NCBI RefSeq assembly: GCF_006345805.1
Contig: NC_043003.1
Coordinates: 95,356,001-95,420,000 of the forward strand
Direction of reading: 5' to 3'
Origin: Octopus sinensis
Taxonomy: Eukaryota
DNA: 64,000 bases
Below the pieces are notes generated by a model. The model worked only from the letters and a program-made list of their open reading frames with translations, was not told the origin of the DNA and ran no database searches. This document shows positions 46,601-49,600 of the stretch, piece by piece (the first letter of the stretch is position 1; the number at the start of each line of letters is the position of its first letter). Both the position numbers and the translations under genes were made by a program.

Positions 46601-49600
46601 ACGTTAAAACTTAGTCAAGCGGCTTTACTCTGCGTGCTTTAGCTTCGTTACAACGGCAACAGCCCGGATATTTATTGGTCAGACCTCGTACTATTAATAA
46701 TGTCATAATAGACAAATTATCAGCTGGTTTCATACCAGAAGTTGAGAATCATCAGAAATGGTCGAAAAGAATAGTATGGCGTGGGCTTTTGTCACTGGGT
46801 CTGAAAGTGTCATATCTAGTTTGTGGGTCTTATGGCTGTTGTAAAAGAAAAACACTAAAACGAAATTCGTGAAGAAATCATCCAGGTTAAACGCAAAGAA
46901 AAACAATAGTTAATTCACTGGAGTTATGTTCTATGTATTGGTAAACAATATATTTACTTATAGGATAGATGAGAGCTGGATGGGCACAGATACAAAGATT
47001 GGGAGTTAGGATGGGTAATAGGGATGGAGATGGTCGGAGTAAATTTTAAAATCAAGTGTGCATGGGCATGAATATATATCAAAGATGGGTGTAGAGAATA
47101 TGAATTTCAAACTGCGGTCAATGGAAACGTTAATGGGAGAGTGGAGATCCAATGTTTGTATTTATGGTGAGGCCAACCAGTTTGCTGTAGTATATCGGCG
47201 CTCATGAGAGCAGGAACAAAAGATTTCACCTTTAATATTTATGTAGGTGCCTTGCCGATGGTGTCGACTAACTCACAGCTCATCAAAATTAATGGCCTTG
47301 TGCGTAAATCAGAAATCACATACATACACACATACATACATACATACATACATACATACATACATACATACATACATACATACATACATACATACATACA
47401 TACATACATACATACATAGCGATTGCTCCATCTTCACAGATGATTGCCATCGTCTGGTGCTTCCACGTTGTCAATAACAGTTTTGATTATCCGTTCATGT
47501 CTTCTCATCTCTATATTAAATCCCATTGCAGATCTGCATGGCTTGGAGCTTAGGTGACAGACGAAAGTTATAACTCACTGTGAACTTCCAGCTGTTTAGA
47601 TTTACACAGGTCACCAGTCTGCCATCCCCATAGGATTTTCAGTAGATGGCATGCTAAATGGAGTCACCATATAGAGACATCTGTACGACATTGGATTATA
47701 GTAATGAACGCTTGTACAATACGAGTACCACTTTCTGAGTTTCTGTGATTAGTACCTAATCGCAGACCAAGGAGAGATTACTAGTAATCACGTAAAACTG
47801 CGGGTTTTACATAAGAGCGTCCCTCTCCTAGAAGGATACTGTGGTAACAGCTACGGGCCCCTCACTCTCGGTGGTTTTACAGCACGTCCTGACACCAACC
47901 AAGGGTATTTCTTTGTCCCCGCTCTCAGAAGAATCCATCTGAGTGCGGGCTTAGTTAAACCAAGCTGAGACCCCGGCAGATATTATTCCGAGTCAGAGTA
48001 GACCTCAAAGTAATAGTAGCTAAGAAGCAGTCCCACACTCTTCAAAACCCTGGAACTCGCAAACAAGAGCTCCACTACCGGTTGTAGCTTTAAGTCATAC
48101 ACGCACAAACACACCACACACACACACACACACACACACACACGCACGCACACGCACGCACACACACGCACACACACACACGCACACACACGCACGCACG
48201 CACACACACACACACACACACACACACATACATATCAACTTTTGCAAAGAAAAAGTCGACAGTGACTTGGAAGTTTCGCAACACAGTGTAAATCAGAACT
48301 GAAATAAAGTTGGTAAAATAAGAATATAAACGGATCAATAGCGTAGAAAGAGTATGAATATATATATATGTGTATATATATATATATATATATACATACA
48401 TACATACATACATACATACATACATACATACATACATACATATATATATATACACATATATATATATTCATACTCTTTCTACGCTATTGATCTGTTTATA
48501 TTCTTATTTTACCAACTTTATTTCAGTTCTGATTTACGCTGTGTTGCTTTTTCAAAGCAGCAAGGTATGATTTGATCGAACTTTGACCGCCTTTTTCTAG
48601 CTGGCCGATAACGAATTCTTTATTGAAGTTTTTATAAAGTTATTTTGTTTAGTTACTTAGAGTAACACTCTAAGTTAAAGTATGCTAAAAGCATAAAACT
48701 ATTGGTAGCTCTTTCTGTTGTGCATTAAATTTATATATATAGGGAGTGGAGTTGAACAAATGGCATTCGAATTAACTGGGTGGAGTTGTTCACTCGCTGC
48801 TAGATTAGATCTAGATTTATGTTATATCACTGACGCCTTCCAGTTATTAACACATTTCTTTATATTGTTTTAGTGCCGGCGCTGAAGAAACAAAGCAAAA
48901 TACAAAGAAAGGAAATGATTATAAGGGAAGAATGAAGGTATTATAGAAATAATATTCATTTTTATTTGATAATATAGATTACTTGGTATTATATTATATG
49001 TAATTTATTATTAGGCGGGGAAATATGGAACGATACATACATTGTTCGAATGTCGCCCATGTGTTCGCTTGTTTTTTTTTTTGTTTTGTTTTTTTCAGGT
49101 CGGTGTCGTATAGAATTAGTTTGAAATACTTTCTGATAATCCATTCAGATTTTAATTTATGTGATAATTTTTGTCGTAAACATCAAATGGAGGACACGTT
49201 GCGTATTATGTACACATTAGTGCACATACTATGCAATATTTATGCATATTTATATATGAAGTTTAACCTGTTTTCCCACTCTAAGTAACTAAACAAAATA
49301 ACTTTATAAAAACTTCAATAAAGAATTCGTTATCGGCCAGCTAGAAAAAGGCGGTCAAAGTTCGATCAAATCATACCTTGCTGCTTTGAAAAAGAAAAAG
49401 TATTCGTGAGAGGATAAAGCAGAAGAAAATAGTTTTAAGTGTTCAGTTTGCGAACGACATATAAGTAGAAGCTCTGAGGTGTGATAATTAAGATGGCCGC
49501 CGACAAGTTTGACATACATGGTATAGTTATGAGTGCATATATAATTGGCACTCCGTCGGTTACGACGGTGAGGGTTCCAGCTGTTCTGATCAACGGAACA

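What the first reader, a model, noticed from the sequence alone, without database searches (positions are those of the whole stretch)
48547..49394. Perfect 117-bp inverted repeat brackets the frame-critical 64-nt ICL3 exon
Seen: the arms lie 210 nt upstream and 340 nt downstream of exon 48874-48937, with no mismatches and no TSD. Skipping the exon joins GTC AG to GTG ATC, giving GTC AGG TGA, an immediate stop after TM5. Established: complementary intronic flanks can loop out exons, promote back-splicing and attract ADAR. Inference: a young structural variant that may switch the gene between full-length receptor and a 5-TM or NMD isoform, with editing of the stem as a possible dial. It is also a substrate for inverting the exon.
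Basis: partly seen in the sequence, partly recalled or inferred. Interest (0 to 1): 0.72.

Follow-up and report, generated by a model that had tools for sequence, protein, structure and literature searches.

The report
Young inverted intron copy brackets exon
In the Octopus sinensis genome assembly, a 117-base stretch of intron has been copied backwards to the other side of a small essential exon of a neuropeptide-receptor gene; two sister octopus species lack the copy, so it is a very recent DNA-copying accident (or an assembly error), and any effect on splicing is untested.

Summary
Arms 48547-48663 and 49278-49394 are perfectly complementary over 117 bp, have sharp ends and occur nowhere else in the window. 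They bracket a 64-nt exon, and skipping that exon gives TVR-stop.

The window is Octopus sinensis assembly GCA_006345805.1. The gene is a QRFP-like peptide receptor (7tm_1). The exon is genuine: all six annotated isoforms from three Octopus species contain it.

Only the downstream arm is ancestral. O. vulgaris and O. bimaculoides carry it at the orthologous site but have no upstream arm. In O. sinensis about 210 bp of ancestral intron is replaced by three pieces: an inverted copy of a nearby upstream segment (116 nt), the inverted copy of the downstream arm (117 nt), and a 9-nt filler. This looks like serial template switching at a microsatellite or hairpin site (FoSTeS/MMBIR-like). It is not a transposon.

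So "young structural variant" is supported, at under about 2.5 My old. An assembly artefact is not excluded (about 0.2-0.25).

The proposed splicing, back-splicing or ADAR "switch" is plausible in principle but has no evidence here. No annotated isoform skips the exon. Published precedents suggest weak effects at 210/340 nt from an exon, and poor circularisation of short exons.

Interest is modest. O. sinensis versus O. vulgaris is a natural experiment that public RNA-seq could test.

The parts
48547..48663 (+). Left arm B: derived, inverted copy of the downstream intronic segment B'. Present only in the O. sinensis assembly.
   Evidence: 117/117 complementary to 49278-49394. Absent from the orthologous position in O. 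vulgaris L002 and O. bimaculoides L001.
49278..49394 (+). Right arm B': ancestral single-copy intronic sequence and the template of the copy.
   Evidence: Present at the collinear position in L002 (23618-23737) and L001 (49308-49423), at 100% and 95% over the arm. It contains the best-conserved intronic 80-nt window of 237 tested (98.8% against O. bimaculoides).
48874..48937 (+). 64-nt ICL3 exon of the QRFP-like peptide receptor gene. It encodes (S)[21 protein letters not shown].
   Evidence: Restores the frame between TM5 and TM6. The peptide is present in all annotated isoforms of O. sinensis, O. vulgaris and O. bimaculoides. Splice sites are identical in the three species.
48278..48393 (+). 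Segment A: ancestral intronic sequence and the template of the first inverted copy.
   Evidence: Single copy in O. vulgaris and O. bimaculoides.
48394..48431 (.). (ACAT)n/(AT)n microsatellite forming the loop of the A/A' hairpin. Inferred site of the first template switch.
48432..48547 (+). Segment A': derived inverted copy of A (2 transitions differ). It carries O. sinensis-specific variants of A and abuts arm B.
   Evidence: No A' exists in L001 or L002.
48664..48672 (+). 9-nt filler AACACTCTA between arm B and the point where ancestral sequence resumes. ACTCTA plus the next AGT is the reverse complement of the last 9 nt of arm B (snap-back).
   Evidence: Read directly from the sequence. Collinearity with the sister species resumes at 48673.
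48276..48279 (.). Site of a 9-bp O. sinensis-specific deletion (GCTTGCTCG, flanked by TCG repeats). It coincides with the 5' boundary of template A.
   Evidence: Alignment A1.
45593..45807 (+). Upstream exon (ECL2 and TM5). The donor at 45807 is in phase 2.
50220..50398 (+). Downstream exon (TM6-TM7, FWGP ... NPYIF).
   Evidence: (7tm_1, E = 3e-17).

Best explanation
The exon-bracketing repeat is the by-product of one recent, local, complex DNA rearrangement in the O. sinensis lineage. It is not a mobile element and not an evolved regulatory device.

The ancestral intron read: A - microsatellite - X (about 210 bp) - I - exon - B'.

In O. sinensis X is gone. In its place lie A' (an inverted copy of A, 116 nt, template 40-270 bp upstream), then B (an inverted copy of B', 117 nt, template 615-850 bp downstream), then a 9-nt snap-back filler. 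After that the ancestral sequence resumes at 48673.

The most likely mechanism is serial template switching during replication or break repair (FoSTeS/MMBIR type):
1. A fold-back in the self-complementary AT/ACAT microsatellite.
2. Copying back to position 48278.
3. A second switch into the downstream intron.
4. A short snap-back.
5. Return to the original template inside the loop of an ancestral 51-nt hairpin.

The consequence in the pre-mRNA is two long duplexes. One is a local 116-bp hairpin. The other is a perfect 117-bp stem (about -197 kcal/mol) that closes a 614-nt loop containing the exon. Such a stem is an obvious ADAR substrate and could lower exon inclusion somewhat. The default expectation is that the exon is still mostly included and that the variant is neutral or mildly deleterious.

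Shown: the anatomy, the derived state of the left arm, and the non-transposon nature. Inferred: the switching mechanism and every RNA-level effect.
For: - **Repeat geometry:** the repeat is perfect and sharp-edged.
- **Source and gene:** the window equals GCA_006345805.1, with 0 mismatches over 54,652 bp and no gaps. The gene is a QRFP-like receptor and the exon is conserved in every isoform.
- **Derived left arm:** O. vulgaris and O. bimaculoides have B' only. They have no B and no A', and they retain segment X.
- **Timing of the copy:** A' carries O. sinensis-specific variants of A, so the copy was made after the split from O. vulgaris.
- **Breakpoint coincidence:** a 9-bp deletion with TCG microhomology sits exactly at the boundary of template A.
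- **Right breakpoint:** it falls next to an ancestral 51-nt inverted repeat.
- **Single copy:** the arm and the interior are single-copy in the window and the loci.
- **Contrast with other repeats:** other inverted repeats in the window have both arms in a sister species.
- **RNA folding:** the fold is -356 kcal/mol, z = -16, with the 117-bp stem. The O. vulgaris orthologue gives -218, z = -3.5, with no bracketing stem. No ancestral pairing partner of B' exists.
- **Known class of event:** inverted templated insertions from nearby templates with micro-homology or micro-homeology are a documented outcome of MMBIR and short-range template switching (PMC8421209; PMC7954356).
Against: - The left arm is seen in a single PacBio-based assembly. 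No read-level or second-individual evidence could be obtained.
- Microhomology at the A'|B junction is minimal: 1 nt, or 4 nt with one mismatch.
- The templated segments (116-117 nt, templates up to about 0.85 kb away) are longer and more distant than typical MMB-TI events, which are under 100 bp away.
- A/A' differ at 2 sites while B/B' differ at none. That is compatible with a single event but not proof of one.
Confidence: 0.62

Rival explanations
1. Assembly artefact. The A'-B block is a chimeric or mis-consensus stretch in the PacBio CLR-based O. sinensis assembly, and the real genome resembles O. vulgaris here.
For: The feature is present only in GCA_006345805.1. The window and L003 are the same assembly. 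That assembly also differs from both sister species by other large indels in this gene, for example 1.2 kb missing at 50010/50011. No independent reads were obtainable.
Against: The region lies inside a gap-free contig. No SMRTbell-type full palindrome is present. The structure has biological hallmarks: a fold-back in a self-complementary microsatellite, a 9-nt snap-back filler, a 9-bp deletion with TCG microhomology exactly at a template boundary, and two transition differences in A'. Transitions are not the typical indel-type error of long reads.
Confidence: 0.22
2. The stem loops out the exon so that a substantial, regulated fraction of transcripts skip it (5-TM or NMD isoform) or back-splice it, with ADAR editing of the stem tuning the ratio.
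For: - A perfect 117-bp stem is predicted to dominate the fold.
- The exon is short, with a non-consensus donor AAG|gtatta.
- Skipping gives an immediate stop 175 nt before the last junction.
- Paired intronic repeats can change exon inclusion and drive circularisation (PMC2533698, PMC4201285).
Against: - No annotated isoform lacks the exon in any of three species.
- In the RABL5 minigene the effect vanished when the repeat lay more than about 68 nt from the exon, whereas here it is 210 and 340 nt away.
- Longer exons circularise better, and strengthening hairpins can inhibit circularisation.
- The repeat is under 2.5 My old and arose by an error-type mechanism, so evolved regulation is unlikely.
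Confidence: 0.12
3. Transposon origin. Either a MITE or foldback element whose terminal inverted repeats are the arms, or two insertions of one element in opposite orientation.
For: The genome is rich in inverted-repeat elements. O. vulgaris carries a 329-nt-arm palindromic element in the same intron.
Against: The right arm, the interior and the exon are ancestral and collinear in two other species, and only the left arm is new. There is no target-site duplication. The arm has no other copy in about 210 kb examined. The exon is conserved in distant homologues (GR[MI]KVIKM motif).
Confidence: 0.02

Closest known systems
Intronic complementary sequences (e.g. inverted Alu pairs) flanking exons, which promote exon skipping or back-splicing and are hyper-edited by ADAR (Lev-Maor 2008, PMC2533698; Liang & Wilusz 2014, PMC4201285)
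   Same: Reverse-complementary sequences sit in the two introns flanking an exon with canonical splice sites. They are predicted to form a long intramolecular dsRNA that closes a loop containing the exon.
   Different: The arms are not mobile elements but a local templated copy of unique intron sequence. They are perfect and only 117 bp long. The enclosed exon is only 64 nt, which is unfavourable for circularisation. The arms lie 210 and 340 nt from the exon, beyond the range in which the RABL5 effect was seen. No RNA evidence exists.
Templated inverted insertions from serial template switching (FoSTeS/MMBIR, MMB-TI; short-range template-switch mutations) (PMC8421209, PMC7954356)
   Same: A deletion is replaced by inverted copies of nearby sequence. 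There are several switches in cis. Breakpoints fall in AT-rich, hairpin-prone DNA. Micro-homology or micro-homeology is small and a short snap-back filler is present. The result is new hairpin-forming repeats.
   Different: The copied tracts (116 and 117 nt) and the template distances (up to about 0.85 kb) are larger than typical MMB-TI events (templates within 100 bp). They are much smaller than the kb-to-Mb FoSTeS events of human genomic disorders.
MITE or foldback transposons with long terminal inverted repeats
   Same: Long, near-perfect inverted repeats separated by a few hundred bp, in a genome that has many such elements.
   Different: Single copy, no target-site duplication, interior and one arm ancestral. 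Membership was tested and not met.

Membership tests
MITE / foldback DNA transposon | The whole unit (both arms plus interior) is absent from the orthologous 'empty' site in relatives | tested here: not met
   The interior, the exon and the right arm are present and collinear in O. vulgaris and O. bimaculoides. Only the left arm is missing.
MITE / foldback DNA transposon | Target-site duplication flanking the terminal inverted repeats | tested here: not met
   The outer flanks do not match.
MITE / foldback DNA transposon | Multiple dispersed copies | tested here: not met
   There are no other copies in the 64-kb window or in three orthologous loci of about 150 kb. The whole genome was not searchable.
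Template-switch (FoSTeS/MMBIR-type) templated insertion | The inserted sequence is an inverted copy of a nearby template and is absent in outgroups | tested here: met
   A' is the reverse complement of A and B is the reverse complement of B'. Both are absent in L001 and L002.
Template-switch (FoSTeS/MMBIR-type) templated insertion | Accompanying loss of the sequence between the switch points | tested here: met
   The roughly 210-bp segment X shared by O. bimaculoides and O. vulgaris is missing from the window.
Template-switch (FoSTeS/MMBIR-type) templated insertion | Microhomology at the junctions | tested here: inconclusive
   The first junction lies in self-complementary (AT)n. The A'|B junction has 1 nt (4 nt with one mismatch). 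The return junction has 3 nt (AGT) after the filler.
Template-switch (FoSTeS/MMBIR-type) templated insertion | The junctions exist in the organism's DNA (reads or PCR) | not testable with these tools
   Only one assembly carries it. Exact look-ups of junction-spanning ORFs and a metagenome scan found nothing.
Intronic complementary sequences driving exon skipping / circRNA | Reverse-complementary sequences in both flanking introns that can pair | tested here: met
   117/117 bp, duplex -196.9 kcal/mol, and the stem is present in the MFE and centroid folds.
Intronic complementary sequences driving exon skipping / circRNA | Skipped or back-spliced transcripts, or editing clusters in the arms | not testable with these tools
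   No RNA data were available. The annotated isoforms all include the exon.
Cassette (alternative) exon | At least one annotated or observed isoform lacking the exon | tested here: not met
   Six isoforms (XP_036360866/7, XP_014777931, XP_052825676, CAI9726098/9) all contain SAGAEET[KT][14 protein letters not shown]. The isoforms differ only at the N-terminus.
Rhodopsin-family GPCR (QRFP-like peptide receptor) | 7tm_1 domain with TM6 FxxxWxP and TM7 NPxxY, and identity to the annotated orthologues | tested here: met
   Pfam 7tm_1 E = 3e-17. The 152-aa TM5-TM7 stretch is 90% identical to the O. bimaculoides protein. The O. sinensis X1 protein maps exon by exon to the window at 93-100% identity per blast segment.

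The most novel reading that the evidence does not exclude
A replication-error mutation less than about 2.5 My old created a perfect dsRNA clamp around a constitutive, frame-critical exon of a neuropeptide receptor in O. sinensis only. It now makes that exon skipped or circularised to a degree set by ADAR hyper-editing of the stem. That would be a species-specific, editing-tunable on/off dial in an animal with unusually active RNA editing, born in a single mutational step.
Probability: 0.06. Interest if true: 0.65.

Novelty: new member of a known kind. Interest (0 to 1): 0.33.

Why it matters
If the variant is real, it is a clean natural experiment. Two octopus species that split about 2.5 My ago are almost identical across this exon and its flanks: 0 substitutions in 914 bp. 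They differ by the presence of a perfect 117-bp intronic stem around a frame-critical exon.

Comparing exon inclusion, back-splice reads and A-to-G clusters between O. sinensis and O. vulgaris would show directly how much a newborn exon-bracketing duplex matters in a cephalopod.

It also documents, at base-pair resolution, how template switching at microsatellites can create long hairpin-forming repeats in octopus introns without any transposon. If it is an artefact, it is a caution about this widely used reference assembly.

Tried and rejected
- **Transposon origin:** rejected. The arm is single-copy, there is no target-site duplication, and the interior and right arm are ancestral.
- **Exon derived from a mobile element, or not a real exon:** rejected. 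The peptide is present in all isoforms of three species, and the GR[MI]KVIKM motif spans the junction in distant molluscan homologues.
- **Ancestral RNA structure in which B' already paired with an upstream partner:** rejected. O. bimaculoides and O. vulgaris show only chance matches of 10 nt or less.
- **Structured RNA gene in the arms:** no credible Rfam match. All hits were microsatellite-driven and below gathering scores.
- **B' as a strongly constrained element:** only weakly supported. It holds the top intronic window (98.8%), but about 10% of intronic windows reach 96% or more.
- **First protein word-index search:** the 152-aa fragment found nothing. The orthologues were recovered by the exhaustive HMMER search.
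- **Independent evidence for the junctions:** exact look-ups of ORFs overlapping junction 48547 and the right arm found nothing on record. A metagenome scan with the conserved arm core gave 0 hits.
- **Missed-adapter palindrome artefact:** considered and judged unlikely. There is no adapter-like centre, the arms are only 116 nt, and the sequence then jumps to a second template.

Full report
**1. Observation**

The repeat is real. Arms 48547-48663 and 49278-49394 are exact reverse complements over 117 bp. With one mismatch allowed the arms extend to 120 nt, with 614 nt between them. Complementarity ends abruptly on all four sides.

A 50-nt core of the arm occurs exactly twice in the window, against 0 in 100 shuffles. 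blastn finds no diverged copy of the arm, or of the 614-nt interior, anywhere else in the window.

The enclosed exon 48874-48937 is 64 nt with AG and GT borders. It lies 210 nt from the left arm and 340 nt from the right arm. It restores the reading frame between the TM5 exon and the TM6-7 exon. Skipping it gives ...QTVR-stop.

Its right arm abuts the left arm of the reported repeat.

**2. The gene and the exon**

The TM5-ICL3-TM6-TM7 translation matches Pfam 7tm_1 (E = 3e-17). An exhaustive HMMER search found a 512-aa protein that is 90% identical over all 152 residues without gaps. It is named QRFP-like peptide receptor isoform X2 of Octopus bimaculoides.

Its 90% cluster holds six proteins from O. 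bimaculoides, O. sinensis and O. vulgaris. All six contain the exon's peptide SAGAEET[K/T][14 protein letters not shown]. The isoforms differ only at the N-terminus. More distant molluscan homologues keep an R[RMI]KVIK motif across the exon-exon junction.

The O. sinensis X1 protein maps exon by exon onto the window. The exon's splice sites are identical in the three species, and its donor AAG|gtatta is non-consensus. The exon is therefore genuine, ancestral and, as annotated, constitutive.

**3. Provenance**

The locus fetched for the O. sinensis protein is GCA_006345805.1, CM016865.1. It is identical to the window over 54,652 bp with no mismatch. There are no N runs in the window. The window therefore comes from that assembly, and L003 is not independent evidence.

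**4. Comparative anatomy (the key result)**

Orthologous loci were obtained from O. bimaculoides (L001) and O. vulgaris (L002). Both carry exactly one copy of the arm. It is the downstream copy, at the collinear position (L002 23618-23737, L001 49308-49423). Neither carries an upstream copy.

From 48673 rightwards the window is collinear with both species. Against O. vulgaris there are 0 substitutions in 914 bp.

Upstream, both relatives have segment A once, then microsatellite, then a shared segment X of about 210 bp. X runs directly into AGTTAAAGTATGC..., which corresponds to window position 48673. O. vulgaris additionally has an insertion of about 1.1 kb.

In the window X is missing. In its place lie three pieces:
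- A', the reverse complement of A. It carries O. sinensis-specific variants of A and differs from A by two transitions.
- B, the reverse complement of B', identical over 117/117 bp.
- A 9-nt filler, AACACTCTA. ACTCTA plus the following AGT is the reverse complement of the last 9 nt of B.

A 9-bp deletion flanked by TCG repeats, specific to O. sinensis, sits exactly at the boundary of template A. The right breakpoint falls beside an ancestral 51-nt inverted repeat.

Other inverted repeats in the window have both arms in a sister species. This is the only one with a lineage-specific arm, and the only near-perfect one.

**5. What it is**

A transposon origin is excluded. There is no target-site duplication, the arm is single-copy, and the interior and one arm are ancestral.

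The pattern has these elements:
- a deletion replaced by two inverted copies of nearby unique sequence, with templates 40-270 bp upstream and 615-850 bp downstream;
- a short snap-back filler;
- breakpoints in a self-complementary microsatellite and next to a hairpin;
- little junctional microhomology.

This is the signature of serial template switching during replication or break repair. Such events are described as FoSTeS/MMBIR templated insertions and short-range template-switch mutations (PMC8421209; PMC7954356). The copied tracts here are longer, and the templates further away, than typical MMB-TI events.

O. sinensis and O. vulgaris split about 2.5 My ago, and O. bimaculoides about 34 My ago (PMC10700109). 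The event is therefore younger than about 2.5 My, or it is polymorphic.

The mechanism is inferred. The derived state of the left arm is shown.

**6. Artefact?**

The feature exists in one PacBio-based assembly. That assembly also shows other large differences from both relatives in this gene.

Several points argue against an artefact:
- The region lies inside a gap-free contig.
- It lacks the form of a missed-adapter palindrome.
- It has biologically typical junction features.
- A' differs from A by transitions, not by the indels typical of long-read error.

I put the artefact at about 0.2-0.25. No read-level check was possible.

**7. Likely effect**

Folded as RNA, the 941-nt region adopts the 117-bp stem in both the MFE and centroid structures (-356 kcal/mol, z = -16). 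The arm duplex alone is -196.9 kcal/mol. The orthologous O. vulgaris stretch folds at -218 kcal/mol (z = -3.5) with no exon-bracketing stem. B' has no ancestral partner in the relatives.

So the exon-enclosing loop is new. From established knowledge, a long perfect duplex of this kind is an ADAR substrate. Paired intronic repeats can also alter exon inclusion or promote back-splicing (PMC2533698; PMC4201285).

Several points argue against a strong effect:
- In the RABL5 minigene the effect disappeared once the repeat lay more than about 68 nt from the exon. Here the arms are 210 and 340 nt away.
- Longer exons circularise better, and strengthening hairpins can inhibit circularisation. This exon is 64 nt and the stem is very stable.
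- No annotated isoform skips the exon.

I therefore regard the switch idea as possible but unsupported (about 0.1). The default reading is a neutral or mildly deleterious by-product.

**8. Verdict**

The "young structural variant" reading is supported and its origin is resolved. The transposon reading is refuted. The functional reading is untested.

It is a new member of known kinds: template-switch-born inverted repeats, and intronic complementary sequences around an exon. Its interest is modest. Its main value is as a readily testable natural experiment between O. sinensis and O. vulgaris.

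Noticed in passing
window 48278-48547: A 116-nt-arm hairpin (97% complementary, 38-nt ACAT/AT loop) lies directly next to the reported left arm. Its right arm A' is also absent from O. vulgaris and O. bimaculoides, so it belongs to the same rearrangement. It would form a second long dsRNA in the pre-mRNA.
   Followed up: yes
window 50010/50011 (L002 24372-25584; L001 50027-51240): About 1.2 kb is present in both O. vulgaris and O. bimaculoides (92% identical to each other) but missing from the O. 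sinensis assembly. The junction is clean and lies 210 bp upstream of the TM6-7 exon. It is either a real deletion or an assembly collapse.
   Followed up: partly
L002 21870-22633 (O. vulgaris, same intron): O. vulgaris has its own near-perfect palindrome (329-nt arms, 99%, 106-nt spacer) inserted between microsatellites about 580 bp upstream of the exon. A related copy (85%) exists at L003 2494-2638, so this one looks like a foldback-type mobile element.
   Followed up: partly
window 48673-49586 vs L002 23013-23925: There are no substitutions between O. sinensis and O. vulgaris over 914 bp around the exon (one 1-nt indel). The next 415 bp carry 15 substitutions, and neighbouring blocks are 93-97% identical. 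Divergence along the gene is strikingly uneven.
   Followed up: no
window 49313-49392 (inside right arm B'): This is the best-conserved intronic 80-nt window of 237 compared with O. bimaculoides (98.8%, against an intronic median of 91%). That is as conserved as the exons. It may be a constrained intronic element, but the excess is modest.
   Followed up: partly
window 27685-30539: A 2.9-kb insertion specific to O. sinensis (absent from O. vulgaris) carries two adjacent ORFs with a zinc finger, DUF4371 and the hAT dimerisation domain. It is a hAT-type transposon inside an intron of the receptor gene.
   Followed up: partly
window 45863-46690: A mariner-like remnant in the intron upstream of the ICL3 exon. 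It has 177-nt inverted ends (80%) around an ORF with a Mos1-type HTH_48 domain. It is shared with both sister species.
   Followed up: partly
window 20535-20882 and 21381-21728: Two identical 113-aa ORFs lie 846 bp apart. This is a tandem duplication inside a 5-kb stretch that aligns poorly with O. vulgaris. Pfam gives no match.
   Followed up: no
window 49543-49850; also 11446-11753 and 39138-39321: An interspersed repeat family (81-86% identity, several more copies in L001) starts about 150 bp downstream of the right arm. It is unrelated to the arms.
   Followed up: no
L001 48628-48678 vs 48733-48790; L002 22904-22959 vs about 23026-23080: An ancestral inverted repeat of about 51 nt (86-90%) lies 150-250 nt upstream of the exon and is conserved in O. 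bimaculoides and O. vulgaris. The O. sinensis rearrangement deleted its left arm.
   Followed up: partly
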